Positions 32,033 to 58,066 of a stretch of 64,000 nucleotides of DNA are shown piece after piece. The stretch lies in assembly GCA_965202585.1 (NCBI GenBank), contig OZ241830.1:15810001-15874000 (forward strand). Direction: 5' to 3'. Each line of letters opens with the position of its first letter. The first letter of the stretch is position 1. The position numbers were made by a program, and so were the translations under genes. The notes under the pieces were generated by a model. That model ran no database searches, had not been told where the DNA came from, and saw only the letters and a list, made by a program, of their open reading frames with translations. The DNA comes from Thalia democratica. Lineage: Eukaryota.

Positions 32033-33577
32033 TTAGACACCCGCATCGTTAGATTGTGACGTCAAACCTGCTTGTGATGACGTAATGTTTAACTGTGACG
32101 TCACCGACGTTCCCTTCAACTTCTGAGGCATTTCCTCACTAACTTGTGACGTCACATGCAACCCATCGTTCGATTGTGACGTCACATGCGAAAGTCCCTG
32201 GCTTTTTTGTGACGTCACAGGCATTCCCTCCCCAAGGTGCGGTGTCGACTGGCACCCGCAGCTTTTGATCCTCACAAATTTTCTCCTCACCCTCCTTCTA
32301 CTTCCTTTCTCCTTTCCTCCGCAACGCAACCTGGCGGTTACTTTTTCGTAATCGTACGGCATGCAGAACGAGCAAGATTTGAAGTGGTCAAAAGTTGAAG
32401 TGTCGACTATTGATTTGTCGTTGGGGATTTTTATCGAGGTTGGGATGAAGAATGAGTTGCATTGTCCGTAGCAGAACCTGTTTTCATAAAAAGTGTAAAC
32501 TTTATATAAATATATATATATATAAAAGATTTATTTAAAGATGCAAAACTCAAAGGACTCGAGTTTCGTGACTATTTACTCATCAGCTTCAAAACAAGTT
32601 TAAAATAAAGCACAAAACAAAATCACTAATGAAAGTAAAAAAATTTTTTGCATAAATAGATTATGACGTAATTTTAAAACTATCAAAATTCATATTTATA
32701 TTTGGATTTTGATAGTTTCAAAATTACGTCATAAACTATTTATGCAAAAATTTTTTTTACTTTCATTAGTGATTTTGTTTTGTGCTTTATTTTAAACTTG
32801 TTTTGAAGCTGATGAGTGAATAGTCACGAAACTCGAGTCCTTTGAGTGTTGCATCTTTAAATAAACCTTTTTATTAATAAAGCCCTCAAGGTGGGCTCAG
32901 TGTGAAAAATTTAGTTTATTAAGTTAAATAACTTAATTCTATATATATATATATATAGATATATCAAAAGGTTTATTTCAAGATGTAAAACTTAAAGGAC
33001 TCGAGTTTCGTGCTTATGCACTCATCAGTTTCAAAACAAGTTTAAAATAAAGCAAAAAAACTATCTATTTATGCTAAAATTTTAACTTTCATTTGTGTGT
33101 TTTGTTTTGCGCTTTATTTTAAACTTGTTTTGAAGCTGATGAGTGCATAAGCACGAAAGTTGAGTCCTTTAAGTTTTACATCTTAAAATACTTCTTTTTA
33201 TTAATTAAGCTCTTAATGTTGGCTTAATGTGAAAGATTTGATTTAACAACTTAAATAACTTAACTATATAGATATATATATAATTAAGTATATATTTCTT
33301 AGTAATAATATTTTTTATTATACATAAAACTCAACCTGTTTCTAATTTTTCCTGTACAAAGACCATCTTCAGTAGTGATAACTTGTGTGACAAACTTCGT
33401 TTTACACCAGTCCTTCTTAACAAGTTTTTTGTTTGCAACCACGAGCGCCTCTTGTGTTGACTTCAGCAAATCCGCATCCTTCCTCCTCGCATTGTACGGC
33501 TTCCAACGACGGGAATTACCCTCGAGTGAGAGTTGAAGTAGAAGGAGGAGGGTCAGAATTAATTTGCTTCTAACCAT
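32033..33577 (-). CDS. grem: Gremlin-like DAN-family BMP antagonist, copy A, 228 aa; two exons
   Basis: Exon 1 is 33336-33577 and exon 2 is 32033-32477 (phase 2, AG|gttgag ... aacag|G). Signal peptide MVRSKLILTLLLLLQLSLEG, then KKDWCKT...NRFCYGQCNSFFIP...SCSFC...RC...SCGC. All nine DAN cystine-knot cysteines are present, with close similarity to the vertebrate Gremlin motifs KRDWCKT and NRFCYGQCNSFYIP. Confidence 0.93.
32549..32593 (-). ncRNA. Minimal type I hammerhead ribozyme with one stem II mismatch
   Basis: Minus strand reads TTTGAAG-CTGATGA-GTAA(ATAG)TCAC-GAAA-C(TCGA)G-TC|CTTTGAG. It is sense to the gremlin A pre-mRNA. Confidence 0.75.
32802..32846 (+). ncRNA. Minimal type I hammerhead ribozyme with intact core
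   Basis: TTTGAAG-CTGATGA-GTGA(ATAG)TCAC-GAAA-C(TCGA)G-TC|CTTTGAG: both conserved core boxes, a 4-bp stem II, palindromic ACTCGAGT stem III, a GUC cleavage triplet (predicted cut after 32839) and a wobble-rich stem I. Confidence 0.85.
32938..32963. repeat. (TA)n microsatellite; shorter tracts at about 32508-32524 and 33266-33281
   Basis: Seen directly; these tracts bracket the foldback elements. Confidence 0.85.
32991..33035 (-). ncRNA. Minimal type I hammerhead ribozyme with intact core and mismatched first stem I pair
   Basis: Minus strand reads TTTGAAA-CTGATGA-GTGC(ATAA)GCAC-GAAA-C(TCGA)G-TC|CTTTAAG. It is sense to the gremlin A pre-mRNA. Confidence 0.78.
33129..33173 (+). ncRNA. Degenerate hammerhead ribozyme with disrupted stem III
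   Basis: TTTGAAG-CTGATGA-GTGC(ATAA)GCAC-GAAA-G(TTGA)G-TC|CTTTAAG. The core boxes are intact but the stem III pair is G-G. Confidence 0.6.
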
Positions 33578-36493
33578 AGTTAAATTAGTTGAAATTTACA
33601 ATACTTTTATTATTCAACCTGTTGAGCAGAAAGAAGAGGTTTAAAAATTACTTCGATATAATAAACATTTAATATAAAGTTTAAATATGTGAGTATCTCT
33701 CTTATAAAAATATTTGTTAATATTAGTACAAATAATCTCTTTCGAATCAATATTTACTGAAATTAGTTTTAAATGGAAAAAAGTATACATTTAAATATAT
33801 TTACTCAAAACCATTTTTGTGTTTAAAAACCAGTTAAAGTTTGCATTTGTTATGGGATAATAAACAATTAACGATATTTTATCTAAAGATTTTCATTTAA
33901 TAAAAAAATCTATGCTTGTTTTATGTAATACATTATCTATATAAACCTTTATGAAGTGTAAATATTAGAAAACACAAACAACTGTTTTTAGTCACTTATT
34001 TCCAAATTCAAAGATAAAACTTACTCTTAAATCTATTTATGTATATTCGAGTATTTAAAATACTTAATACTGGTAAAATAGGTTAAACTTTCCTGTTTTG
34101 AATAACGTTTTTTTAATGCTTTTACAACTAAGAACTTACAATTATAATAAATAAATTGTTTTTTATATACTAGAACTAATGCTTAAAAAACAACGGCTAA
34201 ATACAAATGCTTTTAAGTTTGAGCATGAATTATACTTTTCAATAAAGACACCTATGTAGGCTTCCTGGCAGCTAGTGGACTAAACTATAACGAATAATGA
34301 GAAAAATTATCTTCTTATTAACCAAGGCTCGCATTTTTTCTTCAATAGTTTTTCTCTCGTATTGGTTTTTATCTTGAACATTCTGAGCTTTTTAAATATT
34401 TCAAGTTAGATTTTCGTAAGTCTTCTGTATTAAAAGTTTTTAGGTTAATGTCCCAATTACTAAAATATATCTATGCACTTATATAAATTTAAATTTGAAT
34501 TAACTTTATTATTAAGACTTTGAGTATTATAAGCTTCAAAATTAAATAATAAAGTAAAAGCAAGTATAATGAAATAAGAACGAAAAATGATTTTGTTTTA
34601 AATAATAATATTTAAATTTTTTTATTTGTTACTTCAAGATATATAAATTTAGGTTAAAAAATATTGTTTTAACTGTCGAAAATACATTTTTAATGCTTTT
34701 GTGAACGCAAGTACTTTGAAAACACCTAAAAATCTTTCTACTAATTTAAGATTAAAAAATAATAATTGTTGTTCTTTGAAATTTTAAAGGGATTTAAACA
34801 CTGTTTAGCAGTTTTAAAAGCATTACATCAGTACAGTTGCTTTTGATATAATTTCAGTTTAAAGTATATCATAACAAGCATTTAAGTAGTTGAATAATAG
34901 CTTATAATTACGTAACTACTTAGATTTTATCATAGGCATATGATAAACACAAATATGTTTTTAATACATTTGTTTTGATAACCTTACAGATAACTTATGC
35001 CTTATTTAATTTTGAAAATTGAAAATTATTTAAAAATTATGAAAATAATTTGAAATTATTCATTCTCACTTACAATGACATATAATAAAATTTAATATTG
35101 TAGCTAAAATAAATTAAACACAAATATAGTAGGTTTGTATTACGACTTAGAATAAATTAGGTTTGAAAATAATTTCAAAGTTAAATACAGTTACTAGAAG
35201 ACATATTGAAAATAGATTTTTAAATAAACTTCTTTTTCTACGCTATATACAACTGTAAAAACTTAATATAATAATAAGAACAAAATCTTAAAAATTTATT
35301 TTGATAGAAAAGGAAATTAAATAATTGAAATTAATTAAAATTTATCAAAGCACTTTAACAACTTTACGGGTCAAATCTTTAAATTTTCTGCGACTTTTGA
35401 GAACAGTTTAATATGTTTCACACATTGTTTCAAAAACTACTCCAAAAACAGTAGTAACCTTTTTCAAAACTCTAGCAGAAAAATATTTAACAAAAAGAAT
35501 ACACTGGTATAATAAACAAAATACATGCAGTATGTAATTTTTAATTTCCGTAAAATTTTAAAGGTTTTAACATAAAATACTTTTATCTTTAGTTAGTAAG
35601 CTAATTGATTTTATATACGATTAGATTGCAAACTGAAATTAAAACTTAAAGTATTGAAAAATGAATTGTTTGATAAACTACAGTAAGACAACAACAAATA
35701 CTTTTAAACCGATGTACAGCATACCAACGAAGTACTTAAATAAAAATCACATTCCTGCATAGCAATTGTTAAGTGGGTTTAGAGTTAAAGTTCTACTTTA
35801 GGCGAAGCAAGTTAAACTAAAATAAAAGTAAGTCGTGAAAAAGTTGTTTTTGTTGAAAACTGAACTATTTGTTTCTTAAAATAGCTGGAGCCAGCAAAAT
35901 ATTTTACGTAAAAACATTTTTAATTGGCACCAGTCTTTAGACACATATGTTTATATATGACAACAAATCTTACAAGTTTTTATCTAAAAGTGATTATCAT
36001 TAAGTCGCGCCAAAATTGTTCAAAATGGTTACGTCACTTTTAGTAACTTTTATTCTGCTTTGTTGTAAACTGGAAGTAGTTAATTTTTATTTTTGCTGTA
36101 CAGTTTTATTTTCTGTACAAATATCAATCGTCGAATATGGCTTTATGAGTTACTGCACAAAAATGTTTTTTGTTTTGTTGAACATTTTTAATTTTAATTA
36201 CTGAAAAATAATAATACCAAGTTGTAATAAAGTCAGGGCTACTTGTTAAGAAAGGTTAAAATATCTTAAATTAACACCAAAATGAATTGAATTAGATAAC
36301 GATGAGTCGGCAATATTATATACCGCGCAAGACGACACAAGTTTGTTATTGAAAAAGTCCAAACACTCGCAAATCTGATTAAACGCCAATTAACGTTTTC
36401 ACTCGCCGCACAAAAAACTTTTTAAATATCCAGTCTCGCACGAGGCGTCAATGAAAAATTTGATAAATGATAAATATTTGTTAACACTCACCG

Positions 36494-36508
36494 GGCGCCT
36501 ATGTGTCT
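36494..36508 (+). promoter_or_regulatory. BMP-responsive element GGCGCC-N5-GTCT (Smad1/5 plus Smad4 bipartite site) upstream of gremlin A
   Basis: The sequence GGCGCC-tatgt-GTCT exactly matches the GRCGNC-N5-GTCT consensus. It lies in a block conserved in arm B, about 2.9 kb upstream of the ATG. Confidence 0.6.
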
Positions 36509-39500
36509 CAATTTGTAAAAAAATACTTTCTACAAATTCGATTAGCAGAAATCATAATTAAAAAGCACACACTAAATTGTTTGCTTTCTGATGGAAAAGC
36601 GACTTTTAGGCTTGTTTACACTTCCTGAAAGTGTTTTAAACCATTAAAACAGTTGACTTAGTTGAATTAGCAGCGAATTTAAGTTTTTATTTGGGAATTA
36701 TTACAAGCAAACATTTTTATTTAGGCGCCAGTTTAATGCAAAAGGTCTACACAGAAATGTTAAAAAAAAATGCTAGACGATGTTTACATTTAGGATTATG
36801 GTTTGACCTCGCTTATGACTAATGGATTAAGATATTTATTAATTTATATCATTTAAGATCCATTAAGTTTGTTCTTAGCTTTAATTATTTGCTTGTATTA
36901 AAAAAATCTATAACTCATAAACGTAAGCTTGACTTTATCATCTTTTATAGTTTCTACTAACTTATATGCTGCCGGATTTATTTAAAGTTTATTGATAATG
37001 TTCATAAAAAGATAAAAAAAGCGCTAAATATGACTAATTCTAGAACCAGGTGCACAAAAGAACCTTTTGGTTACCGAATTGTACACCGCTTAACTACTTT
37101 TTAACATCTTGCTCTGAGTTAGGATTCTTAATATGAAAAATTAAGTTTTAAAATCATTGTAGTTTTTACGTGTATATTCTAGTCTAACAACTAAAACTTT
37201 TTGATACAAAGTATTGTTATTTAATCGATTATTTAGAAAAACTGAAAAGAAAACTAAACGCAATTGCTTGAAAAAAGAATAACTTATAAGAAGTTTACTC
37301 TAAACTTGTATAAAAAGACAAAGAAACTCATTCTAACAAAAACAAATTTGAATACTTTTAAAATTTCTTTTTCAGTACAACTTAAGTTGTAAGAAAGGTA
37401 TTTGATAAAGATTAAAGCTCATTGATATATAAGCTTTAATTGTCTCAGTTCAGTTTATTTAGTTGTGCGGCATACCGACTTAAAAGTTAAGCTTTTAGTC
37501 AACAATTTTTATAACTTACATAATTTTAGTCAAAAAAGTCTATATTGTCACATAAGATATTTTTGTTTTGTATATATTTTTTGTTTATTGTTAGGTAAAA
37601 ACTGTTTGAAAAAATATCATAAAAAGTTATATTTGTTAATATTTGTAACAGTTGTTTAAACAGGCAATTTTACACATTTCACACGAAACACAAACTCTAA
37701 ACTTCACAATCAATATTGCGTGACAAAACCACTAGTTTATTATTACAAACTTCCGATACAAATTAACAAACTGTTACAATTATGACAGCTTATAAATATT
37801 TACACAACTTTACACCCCTTTTGATGATCAACTTCCACACAAAACTTACAAAACCGCCCTATTATAAACTAACAATCACAACATTACACTAACGAGAACG
37901 TAAACAAACATTAATGCCCGCACAACAGAAGTTAACAGAATTGAAAACTGCACGAGTTGTTATTTCAAACCTCGAATGGGGGTCGCGCCTTTCGCTTGTG
38001 CAAATAAACTTTCGGTACTTATTGTCATTTGCACATTCGACTGGTGCCAGTGGTAGACGCTGGTTGACAAAAGATTAAAAGTTTGTAATAACAAAGTTAA
38101 ATTGTCATCTGGGTCAAAGAGTAGTCAGTAAGTCGCAGTTTTGTAAAATGCTTTGTTTTTGTTTCGAGAAACGAAAATATACAGTTCATTTGATTGTGTT
38201 GTAAAATTTAAATACAGATGAACAATACAAGAAGTTTTGGGTACAAATAACTATTGTTTGTGGGTATATTTTTTTTAATAGTAAAAATAATTCCTAAATA
38301 AATCTTGATGTCATGTCATTAAAGTTTTTAGATAACTCTACTGATAACTACAGCACTTATTTGTTTTAACTATGTATAACAATAAACAAACGTGATTGAA
38401 GTTAGTTAAGTTTTAGTAAATTGCGAACTTATCAAATTTATATTTTACTATAGTAGAAAGCGCTTAAAACTTTAAATAGTCAAAGAGAGTCTTTCTTTTT
38501 TTATGCTTACAAAATAAAACCACAGACTGCAGTAAAGAAAAAATTAAAATGTTATTTTTATAGTTTGCTTTTGGCTGTAAAACTTTCTGGTTTGATTAAA
38601 TTTAAGAATCAGACAGACTCCATTAATTTGTATATACAAACAAAAAGTTTAAACTAACATTCGTTATTTTTGTACTAAATTACATCACGTTTTTAGTTAA
38701 AAGTCAACTTTTAAAAACACACTGAACTTTAAACCTCTTAAACCCTAGCCGGTTAGAGATAGTCGGTTTTTAATACGAGCTCGTAATTTTAGGTAGCTTA
38801 TCAATGTTTTCATCAAGTTTTTTGATCTTGCAGACTCCGTTGACTTGTTTTCCATAAACAAATTTGCGCTTCCAAACTTCTACTTCCCCTAACTACTGTC
38901 GAAAAACTTCTGCTTCTTATTTATTGTTTCTACTTATTATGTTTTGCTGGCATCATAGGCTTTGTAAATAGCCAAAAAGTTAACCTGGCGACTGTCGCGC
39001 CACAATTTTATAATTGTTATTTTTTATTTTCTATAAATCTCATAGTCAAAATGCTAGACTTTTAAGTTTACTTGTTTTTTGTACCTTAATTCAGAGTATT
39101 AAGTTATCAATCAAAATGTACTAAAAGTTTTGAATAAACGAAGTTAAAGTGTAATATCATTAACAGGTAAACTTTATTTGTCGTAATTTCATCGATACTA
39201 AATTGCTGCGATAACTTTCTTGTACCAAAGCATTTTGTTCGAAAAGTTTGTTTTAAAAAAGCGCTAATAAATACTTATATATATTTTTTATGTATAACTT
39301 CAGAATGCTTCTACTGGACTTAAAATTGAAGTAGCTAAATATCTATTACAAAACACAATAAATACTACGAAACAATAGTTCTTTGGATTTTATTTACAAT
39401 TTGCAATAACTTAAAGACGCAATGTTTAAAATATTTTTGTTGTTTGTAATATATATCTATATGTAAATAAATAAGTGTTTTAACAACGTATTTACTAGTA

Positions 39501-40920
39501 TAGCGTTATTTGTAGAATATTATAGTGCTAAATTTTGTTCAAGAAAATTCAAAATTCAAATTTATAAAGTTGTTGGTTTTACCTTGATGTGCTATAAGGT
39601 TTTAATCAAAGTTTGATTTTTTTGATTAACAACTTCAATAAGTTAGTAAAATGTTATAAGATTATCAAAACGGCTTAATAAATAATATCAAATGTAAGTG
39701 TATTTACGTAACATTGTCAATTACATAAATTATTGGTTTATTACTTGTAACATCCTTAAAATGTGACGTAATAGTAGCAATTTCGGGAAAGTATAAACTT
39801 GGTTTTAAATTTTGTCGCTGGTTTAATAAACGACGGTTACTATATGTCTGAGCTCAAAACAACTTTTTGATGAGATTAAAAATGTCTTTGAAATAACTTT
39901 AAAGAACTAGACAAATACAATATTTAGAAACCTAAAAAAAACTTTCTGTACTTTATGAACATGTTTGATAGTCTTGATGTTAGTTTATAAACTTACATTT
40001 GCAAAACTTTTTATTTCACTTAAATGTCATACTTATTAAAAGTAAGTTAAAAGCTAACCTAACATTTTGCACGAAACATATTAACGTTGCCTATGGAAAT
40101 ATATAATTCTTTTATAATAATAACTCAATTTATTAATAAAAAGCATTAACAAAGTCTGGTAGCGATTATACTTAAATAGATTAAACATTCAAAATTATCT
40201 GAAAACAGCAATGTTAACAAGTTAATAACAATCAGAGCTTCATAAAACATCAGGTAACCTTAACAATTATCGGTATTTTTTTTACGTCACAATCTGATGA
40301 TTACGACGTAACAAGAGCGGATTTGCGACGCCGGTAATAATCAAATTAGAAGATTCAAATAATTTTCATTTGGCGCCGTGTTTTTGATTGGTGGCGAGTT
40401 GTAATTGGTTAATTTTATTTTAATCAGCTGATTGGTGATAAGCTTGAAAATACGGCGCCTTTGAAATTTTCTTTCCAAGTGTTAAATATTTATTAAATAT
40501 TCTGAAAACACGCTTAACTCTGCAAGACTTTTAACAACGTAGGTTCTTGTTTGCAGAAACCATTAGAACAAACTGGTGTAATTTAAGTTTTTTAGAAGCA
40601 AAAAATGAGTTTAGTTACCAATATTGTTTTATTAATGAATACAATTTTTAAACTTTTACAGTAATGAGAATTAAACGTTAGGTTTTGAATTTAATTAGAA
40701 GATTCACATGGTTTTGTACGTGGCGCCTCTGAGAACTCAAGTTTTATATTAATTTGATGATAAAATGTTGTTTTATTTTATGATGTTTTGATAATCTGAT
40801 TTATGATAAGCCGAAGAGTGCGGCGCCGTGTTTTGATATTCCGAGAACATTTAACAAATATTTATATTTTCAATGTGTCGTTGTTGTTATACCAAACTTG
40901 GCTATATCTTTGTGTTGTTC

Positions 40921-41333
40921 GGGTGCACGACTATTCAAATTCCGACAATTCAAATTCTTAAATAAAAACTGAAACCGCCTCAAATAAAGAAGTAATGTAT
41001 ATTTTTCAAATATAAAAAATACATGTGTAGGTAATATTAATATCTACAAGATATATTTCTTTCTTTTTGCAAAACATTGAATAATTTTTAAGATACGGCT
41101 CAAATAAAGTAAAAAACAGAGTTATTTTTAGTAATTTTAAAATATCTTGAAAAATATTTTTGACTTTGCAAAAAAAAAATAGCTTGTAGATATTAATAAA
41201 ATCTACATACATATTTTTATTTTTTTTCAAATTTGTTTAACTTATTGAGATATAGTCGTTTAAATATTTAAATATTTTAAAGAATTTGAATTGTCGGAAT
41301 TTGAGTTGTCCGAGTTTGAATTGTCATGTAACC
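40921..41333. mobile_element. Mutator-like (MULE) MITE, 413 bp
   Basis: 9-bp TSD GTGTTGTTC at 40912-40920 and 41334-41342; termini GGGTGCACGAC / GTCATGTAACC; a 25-bp perfect subterminal inverted match (TCAAATTCCGACAATTCAAATTCTT) with short internal tandem repeats. Confidence 0.78.
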
Positions 41334-42019
41334 GTGTTGTTCTTAACAAAAATTGATTGAAAATTGATAATTGAATTAAATAATTGTAGTTTGACTGTTG
41401 CATTACGAAATTTTAATAAATTAAAACGTAGTAGATTATCAGTTGCTTCAAAAACAAATTTTATTGAAATGAAAACTACATTGTTAAGTACCATTTTATA
41501 GATGCTTCATATACAAACTTAAAAATTAACATCGTAAAACGAAATTTAATAAACTAGCTTAAAAAGTTGTTTTGTGATAAGGAAATAACCAAGTTTTGAT
41601 TTCAAAATACAATATAATATAACTATTCTTAAAATGTATTCTGTGCATTGATAATTTGTTGAACAAAACTATATTTTTGATGAATTTTTTTTTTGCAAAC
41701 AACTCATTATTTAAAGTATCTAAGAATAATACAATAGCAACAAAATATTTTTTTAAGATTTTATAAAATTATCTTTAAATAAGACTTAAAGAATATAGAA
41801 ATAAATAGATCAAACAGCTTAAAAACTAGACAAGTTTGTTTTATCAACTTTAAATTTTTTACGTTAAACAAAGCTTATCAAAAGTTTTTAAGGATTTTCA
41901 AAGGTTAGTTCAGTTAGACGTTTCAGTCAAACAAATAAACTCACGCAAACAGAGTTTTGACAATCTGATTATCATACATGTTTTGTCTTGTTAAGCCCAA
42001 TCAATTCTTGCGTTAGAAA

Positions 42020-42051
42020 GTTGTCATGGCAACCATGATTGGTTTGGCGCC
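42020..42051. promoter_or_regulatory. X-box + CCAAT + TTTGGCGCC module (arm A); mirror copy at 48245-48276
   Basis: GTTGTCATGGCAAC-catg-ATTGG-tt-TGGCGCC is identical in reverse complement at 48245-48276, while the wider surroundings diverge. Confidence 0.55.
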
Positions 42052-42599
42052 AAAAATGAAAGTTTTGTATGGAAGTTTGTTGTCAGCATACGCGCGCCCG
42101 AGTTAAGCTGGGGATTATATTTTTTGAACCTCCTTATATGCTTATTATCTTCGGCACTACCTTTTGGTACGCCGCAGGAAATAATTTCATTATCAATAAG
42201 TTAAAAAAAAATGTTTTCTAATACATGTAATAACTCAAAAATATTTTTGGTTTTCGTGCTGTCAATAAAAATACTTTTTTTCAATAACTAGATTTTTTTA
42301 AGCGCTTACTCTGTACTAGTAAAATATTATAGAGAATAATCTCTTAACGTACTGCATATATACTAAATCTAGTCAAATTAGGTTGACTAATTAAATAGGT
42401 TTAAAATTTACTTTTTTGAATGTGTCTAGTAGTGCACAAACAACAACGACAACTGTTTTAAAGAATAATGGTTTCATTTTGAACTTTTTTAAAAACATTA
42501 ATTTCTTTAAATTATGTTTTCGTTTCAATTAAAAACTTGTCCTTTTTATAATGTAAAATGACGCGTTTTTTTATTTGTAAAGTTTTCTACTTTATTGCC

Positions 42600-42850
42600 A
42601 TAACTACTAATGAGGCAACAGACGTCTGTGATTGTTTGGCGCCAAAACTCAGTACTCGTTGCCACCCGCGGTTGTAAGTGGTTTCCATGGCAACGTCACG
42701 GGGTTCCACCGGGTTGCCAGGGCGTCCTGAAGGCGCCTCAGAATTCGAAATGTGTTTTCTGTTGCCGCCGCGCTGAAACAAGTTTTATCTGCTGCATTCG
42801 CATTGCAGCAACATTTTGCGATTTTTCGCGGCACGTTTTTTTGTGTTTTA
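42600..42850. promoter_or_regulatory. GC-rich conserved non-coding element with an RFX X-box, several GTTGCC half-sites and two GGCGCC hexamers (arm A)
   Basis: GTTTCCATGGCAAC at 42681-42694; GGCGCC at 42638 and 42732; conserved in reverse complement at 47395-47640. Confidence 0.6.
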
Positions 42851-45688: not shown

Positions 45689-45830
45689 CAGGGTTTCTCA
45701 AAGTAGGCCCCTTTAGGATCATAACCAGCAAAGGGACCACAGGGTGGCCATGAGGTCATAAATTAAATTTTACACTACATGTTCTGGAGTTGACGAGGAA
45801 AAGCAAAAAAAAAAAGGTCTCAGACATTTT
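45689..45830 (+). mobile_element. Truncated left end of a hAT-Charlie-like element
   Basis: It begins CAGGGTTTCTCAAAGT, a typical Charlie-type terminus. No matching right end was found. Confidence 0.4.
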
Positions 45831-45940
45831 TAATGGTAGCTTTGAAACTTATGCTAGACACTATGGAAATATTAAAACAAATTATGGGGTAATAAGATAT
45901 TAAAGACAAAATTAGGTGAAAAATATTCAAATCACAAAAA

Positions 45941-46190
45941 GTAGGCGCTGGGCAGCTAGCCGAAATGGTTTCAGCTGCCGGTCCTACGTATCAAGCTCAC
46001 GTCCTGATGGAATAGTCATTTCAGTCTGAAAATACGACCAATCTTCACAACCTAATACACATCGGGCTAACAGAAGTGCTGGCCACTGATCGTATTCTTA
46101 TATTCTTGCGTAGTCGTCCCCATGGTAAGCGACCACCGGGACTCGAACTCGGGACGCAGGACCAGCAGTTGGAAAGCAAAACCGCCTGTT
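45941..46190 (-). mobile_element. tRNA-derived SINE remnant; partial second copy at about 46362-46420
   Basis: The minus strand has a B box / T-arm CCCGAGTTCGAGTCCCGG (B box 46140-46148) after a degenerate TTTCCAA loop, then a GC-richer body ending GCGCCTAC-TTTTT. The end aaaagtaggcg...gctgccggtcct recurs at about 46362. Confidence 0.55.
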
Positions 46191-47394: not shown

Positions 47395-47640
47395 ACACGC
47401 AAGAAAGCTTGCCGCGAAAAAACACTGATTTTTGCAAAATGTTGCTGCAATGCGAATGCAGCAGATGAAACTTGTTTCAGCACGGCGGCAACTGAAAACA
47501 CATTTCGACTCGTGAGGCGCCATCACGACGCCCTGGCAACCCGGTGGAGCCCCGTGACGTTGCCATGGATACCAATTAGCAACCGCGGGTGGCAACGGGT
47601 ACTTGTATTTGGCGCCAATAATATCGCAGACGTATATTAC
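47395..47640. promoter_or_regulatory. Mirror conserved non-coding element (arm B)
   Basis: GTTGCCATGGATAC at 47559-47572; GGCGCC at 47516 and 47611. Confidence 0.6.
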
Positions 47641-50600
47641 CTCATAAGCAGTCGCCCTGTATACTATGGCAAGAAATTAAAGTTTTACGGGTTAAATAAA
47701 TAAGTTTTCTATAAAAAGTTCAAGGAGATCAGAGGGTAAACACGACAAAAAATTTATTGAATCTTAATGTGTTGTAATAAAAGTTAAAAGACTAATAGTA
47801 TTATTTTTTTAGCTAGTTAGTTTTATATATATTTTTTTGTAATAGTTAACTAATACACACAGTTGAAAACGTTAACTTGAAAGTACACAATTGATTAAGT
47901 TTGTTTGATATTAATAAGTTATTAACTTTACTAATTTAATAGTATTAAGAAGTTAAGGCGAAAGTTGAACTTTTATATATCTTAATTAGCAAAACTAACA
48001 ACAACATACAGTTTTCTAAGTCAAAAATGGTCTTTGTTTGCAATTTAAAGCCATAATCATAGTTTTATAATTACACGTAATTCAAAGCGTGTTCTTCTAA
48101 ACGTCACTAACAACAAATCATCGTTGATCGTAGATCAAGTTAAAAGATAACAAGCAGATAAGAAGCTTCACGAAAATATAATCCCCGGCTTAGAAGGAGC
48201 GCGCGTATGCTGACAACAAACTTCTAAACAAAACTTTCATTTTTGGCGCCAAACCAATCATGGTTGCCATGACAACTTTGACGCGAAGCGGTTTTGTTAG
48301 CACTGATTGGGCTTAACAAGACAAAACAAATATGATGCAAAGGAAAATAATCGGATTGTCAAAACTGTGTTTGCGCAAACTCAGTTATTTGACTGGAACG
48401 TCTTACTGTGGCTTGATTGCCTTTAGAACCTTCTAATGAGTTTGAATAAAGTTAAAAACTTCTTATATGTTTCGTTTAATTTAAAACGTTCTATTCAATT
48501 AAAAAAAACTTGTTTAAATCGTAAGCTTTTTGACCTGCTTAATTCTACAAATATTATTCAAAACTTCTTTTTTAAGTGTTTGAAGAGAATATTACGAATA
48601 TTGTTTTCATAAGTTTGCTAAAACTAAAATTTGCTTTTTAAAACAACTAGATACTTATAAGCAAGCCGTAAAAACAAGGTCAAAAACAAGTTCTAGTTAT
48701 TAATTTTTCTGACAGTTATACCAGAAAATTTCATTTATAAAGGCTGTTTTAACCATTGAAAGTTTTTAATAAACATAAAAAGATTTAAAAATAGTTGGGT
48801 AAAAATACAGTACTCAGCTTTTATAATGTTTTAGAGCATTTTTAAACTAAATACTTACGATTTATTCTACTTTAAATTTCAGTAGAACAGAGTAAACATA
48901 AACTATTGATTCTTATTTAAGTTTATTTATGATCTTTTAAAGTAAAGTAAAACTTAAAATAAACTTAAAACAAAAGTTTGATAAACATTCACTAATTTTA
49001 CTTACTTATAGAACCTAACGTTTTGTTTTCATTAATGTAAATATTTAATAATTTACATTTATAAAAAAAAACATTATTGGTATCTAAACTCAATTTTTTG
49101 CTTCTAAAAGATTTAAATTACACCAATTTGTTTTAAATATTTCTTCAAACAACTAACCTACCTTCTTATAAGTATTAAAGAGTTTAGCGTGTTCCTCAAA
49201 ATATCAAATGAATATTTAACACTTTTAAATTCTCATAGGCGCCATATTTTGAAGCTTATTAATAATCAGCTTATCAAAATGAAATTAACCAATTACAACT
49301 CGCCACCAATCAAAAAATACGGCGCCAAATAATAATTATGTGAATCTTCTAATTTGATTATTGCCGGCGTCGCAAATCCGCTTTTGTTACGTCATTATCA
49401 GCAGATTTTCACGTCACACCGGTGCCAGATGGAATTTCGTTTGCCAAAAAATATAGAGATGTTCAAATCTATTATGAAGCCCTGACTTCGATTATATATT
49501 GTAAATGTCTTTATAACTTTTTGTTTTTTTATGAGAATATTAAAGCTTAAATTGTTTCATAATTATAAATTAATATAAGAATAAATATATAATATATACC
49601 TAGTTATATATAATAATTTTTAAATATCCAGCTAGAAATAATTATGTCATAAAGAGTTAAGTATAAAAGTCTGTAACTATTTTTAAATAGAAATTAAAAG
49701 ATTGTTGTATATAACTAAATTTATACCATAATCTTATCAGTTTTATGGAAGGTTATTCCGATGATGCGCTAAACAAAACTAATTAATATACTTTTTCTAA
49801 ATGAGTGACTTATAATTAAACTTTTTAGTTTTAAAATTATTAACAAAACCAAACTACTCAATAACATATATACTATTTTTAAATAAGTATGTAAAGTAAT
49901 TTTTATTTATGGTTATTTTTTTCTAAAAGCAACACTTATGTGTTTAATGCGAAATAGTGTGTTAGCTTTTAATAATTTAACAATAAGTATAAAATTTTCG
50001 AAGAAAATAAAACTATTTTCACATATATGTGTAAACTGTGGTCAATTTACATATTTTAAACAAAAACTTTGCCGATATCAGGTTATAAACTAACAGCCAT
50101 AGTACCAAATATGTTTCAGATAAGATTAATTCTGCAGTTTTTTCAAAATTTCGGCATCAAAAGCAGTTTTTTGTCTCGACGTTTAAAACAAGTTCAAAAG
50201 CACTTTTAATCTATTAAGAAGTATAAAGAAGCTCAAACTAATAGTCATCGAAGTTTGATAAAGTTATATCAGAAAAAAAAACTTTCACCTTTTCTAAGCT
50301 TATCGCCATTACGTCACACTGAAGAATGACGTCACAATAAAGTTTGCATGTTGCCAGCTGATGTACGTAGTTTTGGGTGCATTATTTAAATTTAAGGACA
50401 AATTAAACTAGTTGATGGGTATGATTTACATGTTTCTCTGTATGTTATTTATGTTACAGTTTTCATGAATGTATCGATTATAATAACCTTATAAGAATTT
50501 AATAAAACAAACACATAGGTTCTGAAATAGTAACTAATTTCTAGAAAAATAGATGAGTTGAGTTTTATATATAATCTAATAAAAATATAGGTTTAGAAAA

Positions 50601-53272
50601 ACCGTTTTCAGATTAGTAATCTTTTAATTGTAATATTTGTTTAAACTGCATCCATTAAGGTTAACTATTTAAAATTTACTTTATATTTTTAGAAAAAAAA
50701 TAACTTAATCTTATATTTTCAATTCTTTTTTAAAAAACCAAACTGTTTATTTTTGCTTTTATTTAAAACATTATATTTGATAACTTTATATAGTCTAGTT
50801 TTAATCTGTAAAACATCCATCAAGTTAATATTTAATAAAATAGCATATTTTGAAATAACAATCTAATTAATTAAACTATTGAGCTAAAACTTAAAGTTAT
50901 AACATTTGACGAAGACATACCAACTAATAATGTCAAAGAAATTTTTATATAAACACCTAAAGTAATGCATTATCATAAAATTGTGGCGCGACAGTCGTCA
51001 GGGTAACTTTTTGACATTTTACCAAGCCTATGACGCCAGCAAAACATATCATGTAGAATTCTTTCGACAATAATACGGTAGAAGTTTGGAAGCGCAAATT
51101 TGTTTATGGAAAACAAATCAACGGAGTCTACAAGATCAAAAAATTTGATGAAAACATTGATAAGCTACCTAAAATTAAGAGCTCTTATTAAAAATCGATT
51201 ATCTCCAACCGGCTAGGGTTTAAGAGGTTTAAAGTTGACTGTTTCTTTTTTTTTTGTAAACTTTTAACTTTTAAAATGTTGTGTATATTGCTTTATATTT
51301 ATTTAATTTAGTACAACAATAATGTTAGTTTAAACTCAGTGTTTGTATAAACAAATTAATGGAGTCTGTCTGATTCTTATACAAAATCACATAAGAAATT
51401 TTAGGAAACATAAATAAGCTAGAAACAAAACGTTTTTGTTTTGTCTGCAGTCTGTGTTTTTAATTAGTAAGCATAGAAAAAACGACTCTCTTTGACTTTT
51501 TAAAAATTTTAAAGCGCTTTTTACATAAATAAAGTAAAATCTTGTTTAGTCAGTATTTTACTGAAAAAAAAACTTCAATCATGTTTGTTTATAGTTATAT
51601 TTTGTTAATAAATATAAATTAAATATTCAGGTTATAACTTAAAATAATAGTTAGTACGAGGCAAACAGTTGTATAAAGTTTATTCTAACTAAAAAAATAA
51701 ATTTATACCTACAAATGATAATTATTGCTACCGAAAACAAACTTCTTGTATTGTTACTTTATATTCTAATTTACAACACAATCAAATGAACTGTATATTT
51801 TCTTTTCTCGAAACAAAAATAAAGCATTTTACAAAACTGCGACTTACTGACTACTCTTTGACCCAGATGACAATTTAACTTTGTTATTACAAACTTTTAA
51901 TCTTTTGTCAATCAGCGTCGACCACTGGCACCAGTCGAATGTGCAAATGACAATAAGAAACGAAAGTTTATTTGCACAAGCGAAAGGCGCGACCCCAATT
52001 CGAGGTTGAAATAACAACTTGTGCAGTTTTCAATTCTGTTAAATTCTGTTGTGCGGGCATTAATGTTTGTTTACGTGCTCGTTAGTGTAATGTTGTGATT
52101 GCTAGTTTACAAAAGGGCGGTTTTGTAAGTTTTGAAGGGAAATTGGACTTCAAAAGGGGTGTCGGATTGTGTAAATATTTACAAGCTGTCATAATTGTAA
52201 CGGTTTGTTAATTTGTTTCGGAAGTTTGTGATAATAAACTAGTGGTTTTGTCACGCAATATAGATTGCTCAAGTTTACAAATCGTTTGTTTTTATGTGAC
52301 TTGTAAAATTATCTGTTTAAACAAGTGTTACTAACTTAAACAAGTTTAGTGTTTTGATATTATTATTATGAGCAATTTTAATATAAACATTAAACATAAG
52401 CATATATTTTCTAATAAAAAATAGTAAGTGTTTATTGATGTCAAATAAAGTAGACTATTCTTTTGAAAATTAATTTTAAATTAATTATCTCATTACTAAT
52501 TTACTTAATTTCGAATCTATAAAAATCTATTTTAAACCAGTGGTTTGTCTTTTGATAGTTTTATAGTTTGTTTAGTTTAGTAATTTATAAATATAATTAA
52601 GTTTAACAAAACTTTAAAGTTCTTATTTGTTTAAAAAACTTTAGATTATTCATTTAAAAAGGTTTAAAATAGTTTTAGTAAAAGTTGTAAGGAATTTAAG
52701 TACTACGATTTTCACATATCTTATATTCTTCAAAAAGCAGTTGATTAGTAATACATATTTGCTTGACAAATAGTTTTTGAAATATTCATCAGATTCAAGA
52801 ACTACAAGCAAAAAGAGTTTGCGTAAACTAACTAAGAATGATATACTTGATCATGATTAACAAAATTAATAACTTAATTTCAAATTTGAGAAACTTTAGA
52901 AAATAAACCACAGATTTAATGGACAATAAATGTTAATGATGCATTTGTTCGTTAACTAGCAATTCGGAAGGTCAAACCATTATTTAAAGTGTAAACAGGG
53001 TCTTGTGTATTTTTTTCAAGGCAATTCCGTAGAGACTTTTGCATTTAGTTAGCGCCTAAATAAAAGCTTTTGCCTGTAATAATTCTAAAATAACAGCTTT
53101 AAATCGCTGCTAAATCAACTAATTAACTGTTGTAGCCTATTTAAAACACTTTCAGGAAGTGTAAACAAGCCCTAAAAGTCGCTTTTCTATCAGAAAGCAA
53201 ACAATTTAGTGTGTGCTTTTTAATTATGATTTCTGCTAATCGAATTTGTAGAAAGTATTTTTTTATAAATTG

Positions 53273-53287
53273 AAACACATAGGCGCC
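53273..53287 (-). promoter_or_regulatory. Paralogous BMP-responsive element upstream of gremlin B, with one mismatch in the Smad4 half-site
   Basis: Minus strand reads GGCGCC-tatgt-GTTT. It is the mirror of 36494-36508. Confidence 0.45.
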
Positions 53288-56264
53288 CGGTGAGTGTTAA
53301 CAAATATTTATTATTTATCAAATTTTTCATTGACGCCTCGTGCGAGACTGGATATTTAAAAAGTTTTTTGTGCGGCGAATGAAAACGTTAATTGGCGTTT
53401 AATCAGATTTGCGAGTGATTGGACTTTTTACAATAACAAACTTGTGTCGTCTGGCGCGAAATATAGTGTTGCCGACTCATCGTTATCTAATTCATTTTCA
53501 TTTTCTGGTGTTTTTAGAGATATTCTCAACGAGTAGCGCCGACTTAGCTACAAATTGGTGTTATTAACTTTGAATAAACAAAATTATAACTTATTTAAGC
53601 TTATGAAAAGATTTGTGAAATAAAGTATAAAATAAAATGATTAGTCTGTTAATGTTAAGTTGCAAATGGTATATAAATACGGTTAAAAACTTCCTATACT
53701 AGTAAAATTATAACTGTTCAAAAAAATTACAAACATTTTTGTGTAGTAATTCAATAAAGTTATATTCAGCGATTGATATTAAAAAACGAAACTGTACGAT
53801 AAAAACAAAAATTGACTACTTCCAGTCTACAACAAAGTAGAGTAAAAGTTACAAAAGTGACGTAACTGTTAAACTTTTTTGAACAGTTTTGGCGCGATTT
53901 TATAATTTTTACTTTTTAAAATAAAAAAGTTGTAGAATTTTATCATATGTATTTTAAAACAACAAATGTCTAATGACTGGTGCCAATTAACAAATGTTTC
54001 TACGTAAAATACCTTGCTGGCTCCAGCTATTTCGAGAAAGTCAACAAAAACAACTATTTCAAGACTTGTTTTCATTTAAACATAAACTGCTTTGACTGAA
54101 ACTGAAAAATTGAGCTTTGACTATAAAATCACTCAACTAAATGATCGAAGTAATTATAAAAGCTTGTTATTTATATTTAAGTGCTTCGCTGGTATGCTGT
54201 AAACCGGTTTGAAATTATTTTGCTGATGTTCAAGCTTAGTGCATAACACTAAAGTTTTTTGATTAACTTTACTTTTATTTTAGTATCCAATATACTCGTA
54301 TTTGAAAGCTTATAAGCTAACTTACAAAAATAAAGGTTTTTGATGTTAAAACCTAAAATTTGTTTACTGAAAGTAAAAACTAAGTACTCTAAGTAGTTTG
54401 TAAATTATATATGGTATTATTTTTATTGCTTAAGTTTTAAAAAGTGTTGCTGATGTTTCTATCATATCAAAATAGAATATATATATATAGAATCAAATAT
54501 ACATAAAATATAAGATTGTTCTAAACAGTTGTACAGGTTTTAATCTTTTAACTAATAAGTTCGTAAAATGCTTCGATAGTTTTTATTTTGAATAATTTTT
54601 TGATTAATTTCTTCTTTTGTCAAATTTATTTAAAAAGATTTTTTAAATATTAATTTAACTTTAGTTTTATGTTGAACACTGATTATTAAAGGAACTTCGT
54701 TTGAACTTTCTTTCAAATATTTGTACTAATAGCTGTATGTTCAACTTGACATTTTTTCGAATCTAGTAGTTTACATTGTAATGCATTCATACTACTATAA
54801 TGTTATTTTTTTTCCAGCCAAACCATTTAACTTTATGCTTATGTATTTATAGTTAAGAATGCACGGAATTTTCAAAATGCAACTATCTATAAGATATCTG
54901 TAAGGTTATCAAAACAAATGTATTAAAAACACATAGGGTTTATCATATGCTTATTATGAAATTACGTAATTATAAGCTATTATTCAAGTAATTAAACGAT
55001 TGTTATGATATAAATTAAACTGAAGCTATATAACAAGCAACTGTACTGATGTAATATTTTTAAAACCGCTTAACAGTGTTTAAGCCCCTTATAATCTATA
55101 AAAAAAAATTAATGTATATTTTTCACTCACATCTTAAACTAATAGAAAACTTTTTAATGTGTTTTCAAAAAACTTTTGTTTCTCATAAAATCGTAAAATA
55201 AAATTGTAAATAAGTCGACAGTTCTTAATTTTTTTATAAAGCTCATTTTTTCATATTGACTGACAAAAAATGTGATTTCTATATAATGATTTTTTTTATG
55301 TTGCGGTGTTATGTCATGCAGCTTTTATAAGGATTTCTATTAAATCTTGAAGCTTAAAATATTTGAGGCTTTAATAATATAATTAGACTTTTGAGGTATA
55401 AAACACATATATTTTACTTAGTACAAGTTAGATTTTATATTTGTTTTGAACTTACGTAAAAAATACAAAACTTTGTTTAAAAACCTTTTTGAAAGTAAGA
55501 ACGAGAGAATAAAAAGTTTGGAGAAAAAATGCAAACTTACTTAATAAGAAGCGTATTTATCTTATTTGTTGTATAATTTATTCAAAAGACTGCTGAAAAA
55601 CTGAAACAGATATATTTGTTGAAAAGAAGCTAATAATTAGTTTTTTATTAGTTAATTCTCTATCAGTCTGTTATACTACAACTTGAAGTTTAATAAAATC
55701 TGTTTTTTTTTGCCGTTCGTATAAGTATCAGTTCTAGTGAATAACAAAATAAATTAAAACTAAAATTAGGCGTTTTAAGTTACAACAGTATGAAAGTGTT
55801 TTAAAAAAAGTAAATTTAAACTTGTTCTAGTTAGTACAAAAAACTCTTCAAGCAGATATTTTTAAATAATTCTAGAGTAAGGTTTGTTGTTAAGCTTTGA
55901 AATAATTGACAGACAACAGCTAAAACTTTATTTAAAAAAATTACATCACATAAATAATTACATCTTGATAATCAAAGAATATAAAAGAGTTGTGTATTGC
56001 TAAAATATAGAAAATTATATAAGTTATTATTAAATATAAGTTATTTTACAAGAAAACTTTAAAGAAGGTACGACTAGTTGTTTCAGTATTTATAACAGTT
56101 GCAGTATTAAAATTTAATTTCAGAAACAAAACTAGTTTTAGTTGTATATAGTTTATTTATTTTTGTTTTTATATTCGAAAAGTTTACTGTAAAAGTTTTA
56201 TTAAAACCGTTAGTTAATTTGTATACTCGTTCACAGATTTAAGCATACTAAGAAATTTTTTATC

Positions 56265-58066
56265 ATGGCCAAGATAATTCTGTCCCTCCTCCTTCTACTT
56301 CAACTCTCACTCGGGGGTAATTCCCGTCGTTGGAAGCCGTACAATGCGAGGAGGAAGGATGCGGATTTGCTGAAGTCAACACAAGAGGCGCTAGTGGTTG
56401 CAAACAAAAAACTTGTTAAGAAGGACTGGTGTAAAACGAAGTTTGTCACACAAATTATCACCACTGAAGATGGCCTTTGTACGGGAAAAATTAGAAACAG
56501 GTCAGGTGTTTGTTTATCAACAAAAACATGTTGTTTATCAAAATAAGTAGTTCTTTTAAAATAGTGCTTAAAAGAGCTAAACATTATTAAGTAAAACTTT
56601 AACGACGAAGCATTTTTATTAAAACTAAATTATAACTAAAACAATTAAATCTAAATATTTCAAATGAAAAAAAAAGTATAAGAATTGATACAGAATATTT
56701 TGTAAGTCTAAGAACGTGTAGAATTTTTTTATTTTTCACTAAATTGAAACATCTTTAAATTTTTCTTAATTTAATTTTTTTTTATTTAGGTTAAACTAGG
56801 GTCGACGTGTGATAACGTAATAGAGGTTGAGCAAAAAAAAAACAAATTAATTATATGTTATATTAAGCTTTTTTATTAGTTTTTATTACAAATGTACATA
56901 AAAATACTTTTGAAGAATTTGTTTTGCTTCAATGACTTCACAATACATCACAATACACTATCTCGTGGTTTGAAATAATTAAATGTTAGTTAGTAAATAA
57001 TTCCGAAAATAAATAATTAACCTAACAGGAATCGTTATGACAAAGCAGTGACTCTTAAAGTAATTAAACCAATGTACAACCAGCCTACATACGTTGCTGT
57101 ATTTAAAATAATAAAATATATTTTTTAGTAGAGTGATAAAAAACAAAAATAAGCAAAAAAAAGGTTTAAGTGATAAAGTTAACTTAATTACTTATATTTT
57201 TTATTTTATACAAAATTTTGTAAATTTATCATGTTTTACTTAGTGTGATTCCAGATTATGAAAAATTGTAAAAACAAATAACATTTTTAAGCGTTTTTGT
57301 TAAAATATAAAGTAAGCTGATCATGTGTAGTAAGCTAAGGAATACTAACAATATGTAAAACTGTTGTAAGTACCAAATAAGTTGTAGTTATTAACCTAAT
57401 AAAATATATGTTGATTTTCCGAGCCTATCTAAGTATGAGTTCTGTTAACATGAATTTCAAACACTAATGACAATTTATTCATAAATTGCGAAAGTTATAA
57501 TGCATAACAAAATTACAGGACTGAATTTATTCCGATGTGTTAAGATATTTTTTAAAGACAATATAAAATTACAATTGTTTGTACTTTTACTCTTTTACAA
57601 AATATTGTCATGTAATTTATGTTTTTATAAACAGCAAATTATAAATGATAGATGCAAGAGCTGGAAATTTTTTATTGTGTTTCTGTACTTAACACATTTT
57701 TAATTTAATTGAAAATTTATTATTTTCCACAACAGGTTCTGCTACGGACAATGCAATTCATTTTTCATCCCAACCTCGATAAAAATCCCAAACGACAAAT
57801 CAACAGTCGACACTTCAACTTTCGACCACTTTAAATCTTGCTCGTTCTGCATGCCGTACGATTACGAAAAAGTAACCGCCAGGTTGCGCTGCGGAGGAAA
57901 GGAGAAAGGAAGTAGAAGGAGGGTGAGGAGAAAGTTTTTGAGGATCAAAAGCTGCCAGTGCCAGTCAACACCGCGCCTTGGGGAGGGAATGCCTGTGACG
58001 TCACAATTAAACATTACGTCATCACAAGCAGGTGTGACGTCACAGTTTAACAGGACGGAGGTTTAG
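56265..58066 (+). CDS. grem: Gremlin-like DAN-family BMP antagonist, copy B, 188 aa; two exons
   Basis: Exon 1 is 56265-56500 (donor AG|gtcagg) and exon 2 is 57736-58066 (acceptor ccacaacag). Same nine cysteines and a near-identical core to copy A, with a shorter C-terminal tail. Confidence 0.93.

What the first reader, a model, noticed from the sequence alone, without database searches (positions are those of the whole stretch)
32033..58066. Head-to-head gremlin pair on a roughly 26 kb inverted duplication, with exons far more alike than the surrounding DNA
Seen: two intact gremlin ORFs about 22.7 kb apart, diverging from a shared region. In exon 1 after the first few codons I count 7 substitutions in about 225 nt, 4 of them synonymous. 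The introns and the DNA between conserved blocks could not be aligned by eye. Inference: an old duplication whose coding exons are kept similar by arm-to-arm gene conversion, as in palindromic amplicons, giving a doubled BMP-antagonist locus with mirrored enhancers. Caveat: highly heterozygous genomes can produce false duplications. Against that, similarity fades right after the stop codons, and no mirror of the GPCR appears before 64 kb.
Basis: partly seen in the sequence, partly recalled or inferred. Interest (0 to 1): 0.72.

Follow-up and report, generated by a model that had tools for sequence, protein, structure and literature searches.

The report
Mirror-image gremlin genes kept alike
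Two head-to-head copies of a gremlin-like BMP-antagonist gene sit on an old, mostly decayed inverted duplication, and their exons plus about nine upstream regulatory blocks have stayed nearly identical because the copies repeatedly overwrite each other (gene conversion), a known process seen here in an unusually clean form.

Summary
Arms 32048-42850 and 47393-58051 are collinear inverted copies around a 4.5 kb spacer. Each carries an intact two-exon DAN/gremlin gene. The start codons are 22.7 kb apart and the genes diverge.

Most of each arm is only 50-70% alike. Eleven islands are 90-98% alike: both exons and nine non-coding blocks.

Purifying selection alone cannot explain this.
- Synonymous divergence between the arms is 0.07-0.17.
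- It is about 0.5 to a related lineage S (metagenome contig L053), which is no more distant in neutral DNA.
- In the islands the path between the left copy and the right copies is about 9 times too short relative to the S branch (chi-square p = 2e-22).
- One control island (40284-40494) shows what selection alone gives.
- A second contig, O, groups with the left copy by its 3' flank but not in exon 2.

It also extends to enhancer-like blocks that carry conserved GGCGCC (SMAD-type) motifs.

New here: a third copy lies 50 kb beyond the right copy, inside a 48-62 kb tandem repeat. That repeat could instead be a haplotype mis-join.

The closest precedent is the Drosophila Amy and Hsp70 palindromic pairs. 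This is a new member of a known kind, of moderate interest.

The parts
32048..42850 (-). Left arm (L) of the inverted duplication, 10.8 kb
   Evidence: Collinear inverted BLAST matches. Identity profile.
47393..58051 (+). Right arm (R) of the inverted duplication, 10.7 kb. From 47208 it is also the start of a 48 kb unit repeated in tandem downstream.
42851..47392 (.). Unique 4.5 kb spacer between the arms, built largely of dispersed repeats
   Evidence: No arm-to-arm similarity. Many genome-wide copies of its parts.
33336..33577 (-). Left gremlin-like gene, coding exon 1: signal peptide and N-terminal part of the DAN domain
   Evidence: Pfam DAN hit.
32033..32477 (-). Left gene, coding exon 2: rest of the DAN cystine knot plus a VTSQ-repeat tail, with the stop codon
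   Evidence: Pfam DAN E = 1e-12. Best solved relatives are Gremlin-2 and Gremlin-1.
56265..56500 (+). Right gremlin-like gene, coding exon 1
57736..58066 (+). Right gene, coding exon 2. Its tail is 38 aa shorter than in the left copy.
42668..42806 (.). Non-coding island 1, GC 55%, mirrored at 47447-47586. Carries GGCGCC.
42027..42082 (.). Non-coding island 2, mirrored at 48214-48269. Its GGCGCC is conserved in L, R, Q and S.
40284..40494 (.). Control island, mirrored at 49207-49414. Conserved across species with two GGCGCC motifs, but not recently homogenised. L-R identity is about 88-90%, the same as S-L.
38730..38869 (.). Non-coding island 3, mirrored at 51092-51231
37711..38198 (.). Non-coding islands 4 and 5, mirrored at 51777-52263. 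L-R identity 88-97%.
36301..36625 (.). Non-coding island 6, mirrored at 53155-53481, 98% alike. Holds a BMP-response-element-like GGCGCC-N5-GTCT at 36494-36508, conserved in L, Q and S.
34806..36086 (.). Three short islands (36044-36086, 35889-35928, 34806-34857), mirrored at 53809-55071

Best explanation
This is an old inverted segmental duplication. Each arm carries a two-exon gremlin-like (DAN-family, secreted cystine-knot) BMP-antagonist gene with about 9 kb of its upstream regulatory DNA.

Neutral DNA in the arms has decayed to background. The two exons and nine upstream conserved non-coding islands have been repeatedly homogenised by ectopic (non-allelic) gene conversion between the copies.

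Shown:
- the mosaic of similarity along the arms;
- the intact genes;
- cross-species conservation of the islands;
- branch lengths that are incompatible between islands and neutral DNA;
- synonymous sites that are unconstrained yet homogenised.

Inferred:
- Breaks in one arm are repaired from the other arm.
- Tracts are confined to blocks that purifying selection keeps similar enough to pair, so selection and conversion reinforce each other.
- The inverted orientation turns crossovers into harmless inversions instead of deletions.
- The islands are BMP-responsive enhancers, so the antagonist copies keep a mirrored feedback landscape.
For: Structure.

Gene identity: Pfam DAN on both exons. Only Gremlin-1 and Gremlin-2 are hit among solved structures. 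Nine cysteines are conserved in all copies.

Synonymous divergence in the mature DAN region: L-R 0.14, L-Q 0.07, R-Q 0.17. R-Q neutral identity is 86-92%, so synonymous sites run at the neutral rate.

Three-way site counts: unique changes in the islands are L:R:Q = 33:48:49. Outside the islands they are 2936:392:484.

Four-way counts with S = L053:
- Islands: S-unique 127, L-unique 15, R/Q stem 12, R 26, Q 27.
- Well-aligned non-island DNA: 130, 144, 102, 49, 48.
- Heterogeneity chi-square = 99.8, p = 2e-22.
- Conflicting splits (LR|QS plus LQ|RS) number 18 against 12 for LS|RQ in the islands. In neutral DNA they number 12 against 102. Fisher p = 6e-8.

Exon 1 dS: 0.46-0.52 to S, but 0.08-0.11 between the arms.

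Contig O: L-type 3' flank (72% versus 49%). Yet in the exon 2 core there are 0 sites supporting L+O, 11 O-only sites, and L-Q at 96.5% exceeds L-O at 92.2%.

Internal control: island 40284-40494 has L plus stem = 13 against S = 14, the selection-only expectation.

Islands are non-coding: no 3-periodicity, against 5/20/10 in exon 1.

GGCGCC occurs 16 times against 0.55 expected. Fifteen of the 16 lie in the arms, and five positions are conserved in L, R, Q and S.

Gremlin is a positively regulated direct pSMAD1/5 target in Nematostella (PMC10849676).
Against: - Site numbers per island are small, and gene trees of single exons are unresolved stars.
- The outgroups are short metagenome contigs of unknown species. 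It is not settled whether S is an orthologue of R/Q or branched off before the duplication.
- No individual conversion tract was delimited, and the shared-state sites are interleaved rather than clustered.
- No RNA data were found, so expression, the transcription start and enhancer function are inferred.
- GC3 is raised in the gremlin genes generally, including the unlinked copy on contig C1. It therefore gives no specific sign of GC-biased conversion.
- The clock copy Q may be an allele of R rather than a paralogue. That changes the dating, not the conclusion.
Confidence: 0.85

Rival explanations
1. Purifying selection alone keeps exons and enhancers alike. No sequence is exchanged between the arms.
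For: The islands are conserved in lineage S at 83-95%, so constraint is real. One island (40284-40494) fits this model fully.
Against: Constraint scales all branches alike. In the islands the L-to-R/Q path is about 9 times too short relative to the S branch, and no longer than the young R and Q tips. Synonymous sites evolve at the neutral rate between R and Q and towards S (dS 0.17 and about 0.5), yet L-R and L-Q dS are 0.07-0.14.
Confidence: 0.05
2. The L/R inverted pair is an assembly artefact: two haplotypes of one locus joined head to head.
For: The sample is very heterozygous. Run X1 carries a second L-arm haplotype about 10% diverged. Other notes on this genome suspect haplotype mis-joins.
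Against: About 85% of the arm length is only 50-70% alike, with different intron lengths (858 versus 1235 nt) and different flanks. That is far beyond the roughly 10% allelic divergence. L itself has its own pair of haplotypes in X1. Independent metagenome contigs carry distinct L-type (O, 5' part of L050) and R-type (S) flanks. The 174 kb examined has no gap.
Confidence: 0.02
3. Exons are homogenised through a spliced RNA or cDNA intermediate rather than DNA-to-DNA conversion. This would explain why similarity stops within a few bases of exon borders.
For: Similarity ends 2-5 nt beyond three exon borders.
Against: It cannot explain nine non-coding islands up to 9 kb upstream with the same collapsed branch pattern. 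One sharp border is simply explained by a roughly 760 nt high-copy repeat inserted in the left intron. That repeat is absent from the related contig L050, whose intron is about 97 nt.
Confidence: 0.03
4. The third copy Q is not a gene copy. It is the other haplotype of R, mis-joined in tandem, so the locus is a true pair and R-Q differences are allelic.
For: R-Q identity (84-92%) equals the divergence between the two L haplotypes in X1 (about 89-91%). The repeat is strictly head to tail (U1 47208-95625, U2 97081-159545 in extended coordinates). Two other roughly 46-58 kb tandem repeats in this genome were flagged the same way.
Against: There is no gap. A 1455 nt repeat-derived filler at the junction matches neither the spacer nor the DNA after U2. 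Summed contig depths on the islands reach about 250-260 against about 87 on L-only DNA, but those sites lie near contig ends, so the figure is unreliable.
Confidence: 0.4

Closest known systems
Drosophila Amy-p/Amy-d and Hsp70Aa/Ab palindromic gene pairs (ectopic gene conversion; review PMC3924832)
   Same: Tightly linked mirror-image paralogues. Paralogues within a species are more alike than orthologues. Silent sites are homogenised. Concerted evolution is confined to selected sequence while flanks evolve independently. The inverted orientation makes crossovers harmless.
   Different: Here the gene is a developmental signalling antagonist. The arms are about 10.8 kb with a 4.5 kb spacer. Homogenisation also hits about nine discrete distal non-coding islands up to 9 kb upstream, whereas for Amy the review describes coding-only concerted evolution. 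A third, direct copy may take part.
Large palindromic amplicons of sex chromosomes
   Same: Inverted arms around a unique spacer, with arm-to-arm conversion.
   Different: Those arms are near-identical along their whole length. Here only about 15% of the arm is alike and the rest has decayed to 50-70%.
Gremlin of Nematostella vectensis (PMC10849676)
   Same: A DAN-family BMP antagonist that is itself a positively regulated direct pSMAD1/5 target with a binding site in its regulatory region. The islands here carry conserved GGCGCC and one GGCGCC-N5-GTCT element.
   Different: The paper treats a single gremlin gene. Here there are 2-3 linked copies plus one unlinked copy. BMP responsiveness is not tested here.

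Membership tests
DAN / gremlin family of BMP antagonists | DAN domain (Pfam PF03045) above the curated threshold | tested here: met
   Exon 2 products score 48.5 and 58.1 bits against a cut-off of 22. Exon 1 products match profile positions 5-41 just under the cut-off, because the domain is split by the intron.
DAN / gremlin family of BMP antagonists | Cystine-knot cysteine pattern (nine cysteines, including the FCYGQC and SCSFC motifs) and an N-terminal signal peptide | tested here: met
   All nine cysteines are present in L, R and Q. A hydrophobic N-terminus is read directly from the translations. No signal-peptide predictor was run.
DAN / gremlin family of BMP antagonists | Closer to gremlins than to other DAN members | tested here: inconclusive
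   The only solved structures hit at E < 0.01 are Gremlin-2 and Gremlin-1. No family-wide tree was built.
DAN / gremlin family of BMP antagonists | Binds and blocks BMP ligands | not testable with these tools
   Needs a binding or signalling assay.
Concerted evolution by ectopic gene conversion | Paralogues within the genome are more alike than orthologues or outgroups in the tract, while flanks follow the duplication history | tested here: met
   island branch pattern versus neutral DNA p = 2e-22. O groups with L in the flank only.
Concerted evolution by ectopic gene conversion | Homogenisation of silent sites that are otherwise free to change | tested here: met
   dS L-R 0.11-0.17 and L-Q 0.07-0.08, against R-Q 0.17 and about 0.5 to S.
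Concerted evolution by ectopic gene conversion | Variants shared between paralogues, or delimited conversion tracts | tested here: inconclusive
   There is an excess of LR|QS and LQ|RS sites in the islands (Fisher p = 6e-8), but they are interleaved. No tract was delimited and there is no population sample.
Whole-arm palindromic amplicon | Arms near-identical along their full length | tested here: not met
   Background identity is 50-70%. Only eleven islands reach 90% or more.
False (haplotypic) duplication in an assembly | Copies differ by no more than allelic divergence along their whole length | tested here: not met
   This holds for L versus R: the arms are 50-70% alike against about 10% allelic divergence. 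For R versus Q the feature is met and the question stays open.

The most novel reading that the evidence does not exclude
Gene conversion here acts as a mechanism that keeps whole cis-regulatory landscapes of paralogues in step. Discrete BMP-responsive enhancers up to 9 kb from the genes are co-converted with the exons in separate short patches. One equally conserved enhancer (40284-40494) has escaped, and the coding tails diverge by repeat indels. The system is still active in a hyperdiverse marine species, with inversion-type recombinants (L-type 5' joined to R-type 3', contig L050) segregating.
Probability: 0.4. Interest if true: 0.6.

Novelty: new member of a known kind. Interest (0 to 1): 0.42.

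Why it matters
The locus lets the two forces that keep duplicates alike be told apart within about 26 kb. Selection alone gives about 88-90% identity (the control island and the outgroup S). Selection plus conversion gives 95-98%.

It also suggests that conversion can synchronise distal enhancers of a dosage-sensitive developmental antagonist, not only coding sequence. This bears on how duplicated regulators avoid or delay subfunctionalisation.

On the practical side, paralogue trees or dS-based dating for this gene family in this clade would be badly misled. The neighbouring roughly 50 kb tandem repeat needs checking before copy number is reported.

Tried and rejected
- Rfam and tRNA scans of the whole window found nothing, so the islands are not known RNA genes.
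- The islands are not coding: no codon periodicity and no conserved open frame.
- The JGI metagenome scan gave only distant DAN genes, at most 52% identical.
- A protein search with the short R-type exon 2 ORF found no R-type orthologue.
- No RNA run holds the locus, so expression, transcript start and splicing could not be checked.
- Read laying returned contigs only. I first read summed depths of about 250-260 on the islands as proof of three loci. I dropped this because those sites lie within about 30 nt of contig ends, where consecutive contigs overlap.
- At L-unique island sites, letters matching R/Q may come from cross-laid R/Q contigs. They are not counted as L polymorphism.
- GC3 as a footprint of GC-biased conversion was rejected, because the unlinked, unconverted C1 copy has even higher GC3.
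- Single-exon ML trees are unresolved stars and add nothing beyond the site counts.
- The C1 copy is not the source of S: no flank similarity.
- The alt L haplotype is not elsewhere in the assembly.
Full report
ANATOMY

The window is G000:C6:15810001-15874000 of an 801 Mb genome with about 26% GC. Runs and contigs that hold the locus are labelled marine metagenome, including Tara Oceans records. No N occurs in the window or in the 110 kb fetched beyond it.

Inverted-repeat search and self-BLAST give ten collinear inverted matches. They define a left arm L at 32048-42850, a right arm R at 47393-58051 and a 4.5 kb spacer. The outer limits fall about 15 nt before the two stop codons. Nothing left of 32 kb is mirrored right of 58 kb, and that includes the GPCR ORF at 25974-26969.

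Each arm holds an intact gene with one GT-AG intron in the same phase (AG|G codon).
- L, minus strand: exon 1 33577-33336, exon 2 32477-32033, 228 aa.
- R, plus strand: exon 1 56265-56500, exon 2 57736-58066, 188 aa.

Both exons hit the Pfam DAN domain. The only solved relatives are Gremlin-2 and Gremlin-1. All nine knot cysteines are present.

A MOSAIC, NOT A UNIFORM PALINDROME

Global alignment shows background identity of 50-70%, close to noise in such AT-rich DNA. Eleven islands reach 90-98%: the two exons and nine non-coding blocks between 34.8 and 42.8 kb. A tenth non-coding block at 40284-40494 is 88-90% alike.

The non-coding islands show no codon periodicity (for example 10/9/11 and 11/12/10, against 5/20/10 in exon 1) and no conserved open frame. 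They match no Rfam family or tRNA. Their GC is 27-56% against 24-25% outside.

GGCGCC occurs 16 times in the window against 0.55 expected. Fifteen occurrences lie in the arms, in mirrored positions. Five positions are conserved in all copies and in another lineage. One forms a GGCGCC-N5-GTCT element at 36494-36508 that is conserved across lineages.

In Nematostella, gremlin is a positively regulated direct pSMAD1/5 target (PMC10849676). The enhancer reading is therefore reasonable, but it remains an inference.

A THIRD COPY

A search of the whole assembly finds four gremlin-like genes: L, R, a copy Q at C6:15917731-15918021, and a distant one on contig C1 with 60% amino-acid identity.

Q belongs to a strict head-to-tail repeat of the DNA that starts at 47208. 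Coordinates below are extended ones, that is, window coordinates continued into the loci fetched beyond its end.
- Unit 1: 47208-95625.
- A 1455 nt repeat-derived filler.
- Unit 2: 97081-159545.
- Identity between the units: 84-92% throughout, introns included.

Q is intact, at 216 aa.

SELECTION OR CONVERSION

Four lines of evidence bear on this.

(a) Silent sites. In the mature DAN region dS is 0.17 for R-Q, matching their neutral divergence. Silent sites are therefore not constrained. Yet dS is only 0.14 for L-R and 0.07 for L-Q, although the L flanks are saturated.

(b) Three-way site counts. In the islands, changes unique to L, R and Q number 33, 48 and 49. Outside the islands they number 2936, 392 and 484. 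Constraint lowers all branches in proportion, so it cannot remove the long L branch alone.

(c) Outgroup S. A protein search with exon 1 returned ORFs on marine metagenome contigs. L053 (10.4 kb; L051 and L052 are 99% identical to it) is collinear with a whole arm, from island 1 to the intron. It is absent from this assembly and is not the C1 copy.
- In well-aligned non-island DNA the branches are about equal: S 130, L 144, R/Q stem 102, R 49, Q 48.
- In the islands they are S 127, L 15, stem 12, R 26, Q 27.
- Heterogeneity is chi-square 99.8, p = 2e-22.
- Exon 1 dS is 0.46-0.52 to S and 0.08-0.11 between the arms.
- The three possible informative splits are about equally frequent in the islands (12, 11, 7), against 102, 7, 5 in neutral DNA (Fisher p = 6e-8). 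That is a reticulate signal.
- The block at 40284-40494 is an internal control. There L plus stem (13) equals S (14), as selection alone predicts.

(d) Outgroup O. O is the 755 nt contig L014. It aligns with L for 170 nt beyond the stop codon (72% against 49% for R and Q) and shares L's C-terminus, so it is an L orthologue. In the exon 2 core, no site supports L+O, 11 sites are O-only, and L-Q (96.5%) and L-R (95.0%) exceed L-O (92.2%).

ML trees of single exons are unresolved stars. That is consistent with these results but adds no support.

CONCLUSION ON MECHANISM

The duplication is at least as old as the split from O and S. The islands are under purifying selection, since they are conserved in S at 83-95%. 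Exons and nine islands have in addition been homogenised among the copies until about the time R and Q diverged, and probably since.

The mechanism is inferred. Conversion tracts can start and extend only where selection has kept enough homology. Neutral DNA has drifted past that limit.

One abrupt border has a simple cause. The left intron is filled by a high-copy repeat, with summed contig depth of 10^4-10^5. The related contig L050 lacks this repeat, and its intron is about 97 nt.

ARTEFACT QUESTION

Contigs of run X1 show two L-arm haplotypes on neutral DNA. One is identical to the assembly (depth 35-39). The other is about 9-11% different (depth 47-51). Run X3 (organism B) has only the second. 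The second haplotype is not elsewhere in the assembly.

L and R cannot be alleles, because they are far more diverged than this and have different introns and flanks.

R and Q are exactly as diverged as the two L haplotypes. Two other tandem repeats of about 46-58 kb in this genome were flagged as possible mis-joins. I therefore leave a 40% chance that Q is the other haplotype of R. The filler at the junction and the absence of a gap argue for a real duplication. Depth sums from contigs are not reliable enough to decide.

Either way the conversion result stands. If Q is an allele, L differs from R in the islands no more than R's alleles differ from each other.

COMPARISON AND SCORE

The closest precedents are the palindromic Amy and Hsp70 pairs of Drosophila. 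In those pairs, paralogues are more alike than orthologues, silent variants are shared, and for Amy concerted evolution is confined to coding sequence (PMC3924832).

The present case adds patchwise homogenisation of distal conserved non-coding elements in a developmental antagonist locus. It is a new member of a known kind. The example is clean and could be tested at the bench, but it is not a surprise to a specialist. Interest is 0.42.

Noticed in passing
G000:C6:15857208-15969545 (window 47208 onward, continuing about 95 kb beyond the window end): Head-to-tail repeat of a 48-62 kb unit, 84-92% alike, carrying a third intact gremlin copy (216 aa). A 1455 nt repeat-derived filler sits at the junction. 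Unit 2 has an extra roughly 8.5 kb insertion and an expanded internal tandem array. It is either a real tandem duplication or a haplotype mis-join.
   Followed up: partly
L050 (Tara Oceans contig, 1096 nt), compared with window 33732-33297, 32515-32207 and 57731-58320: One contig joins an L-type 5' flank, exon 1 and a short L-type intron to an R-type tail (with R's 38 aa deletion) and an R-type 3' flank. This is the product expected from a crossover between the arms inside exon 2, that is, an inversion of the interval. It could also be a metagenome assembly chimera.
   Followed up: partly
window 32496-33290 (left intron): The left intron is almost wholly a high-copy repeat, with summed contig depth 10^4-10^5 in all runs. 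The related contig L050 lacks it, and its intron is about 97 nt. R, Q and S have an unrelated intron of about 1.2 kb.
   Followed up: partly
window 33800-35800, runs X1 and X3: The sampled individual carries two L-arm haplotypes about 9-11% apart in neutral DNA. A run labelled as another organism has only the non-reference one. This suggests extreme heterozygosity or admixture of two lineages.
   Followed up: partly
G000:C1:40927229-40928177 (L012): The unlinked fourth gremlin-like gene has GC3 of 0.84-0.98 in a genome of about 26% GC. The linked copies have 0.52-0.58 and the neighbouring GPCR ORF has 0.26.
   Followed up: no
window 32033-32220 and 57990-58066; Q in L009; O in L014: The C-terminal tails are built of VTSQ units encoded by TGACGTCA-containing repeats. 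They differ by large in-frame indels among L (228 aa), R (188 aa), Q (216 aa) and the outgroup O. This is the one coding part that escapes homogenisation.
   Followed up: partly
L054 versus L052 and L053: Contig L054 is 99.5% identical to the S locus from codon 10 of exon 1 through the intron. Its first 243 nt differ and encode an L-like signal peptide. It is either a second paralogue in lineage S recombined within exon 1, or an assembly chimera.
   Followed up: no
window 53261-53301: In the right copy the AGAC half of the conserved AGAC-N5-GGCGCC element reads AAAC. L, Q and S keep AGAC.
   Followed up: no
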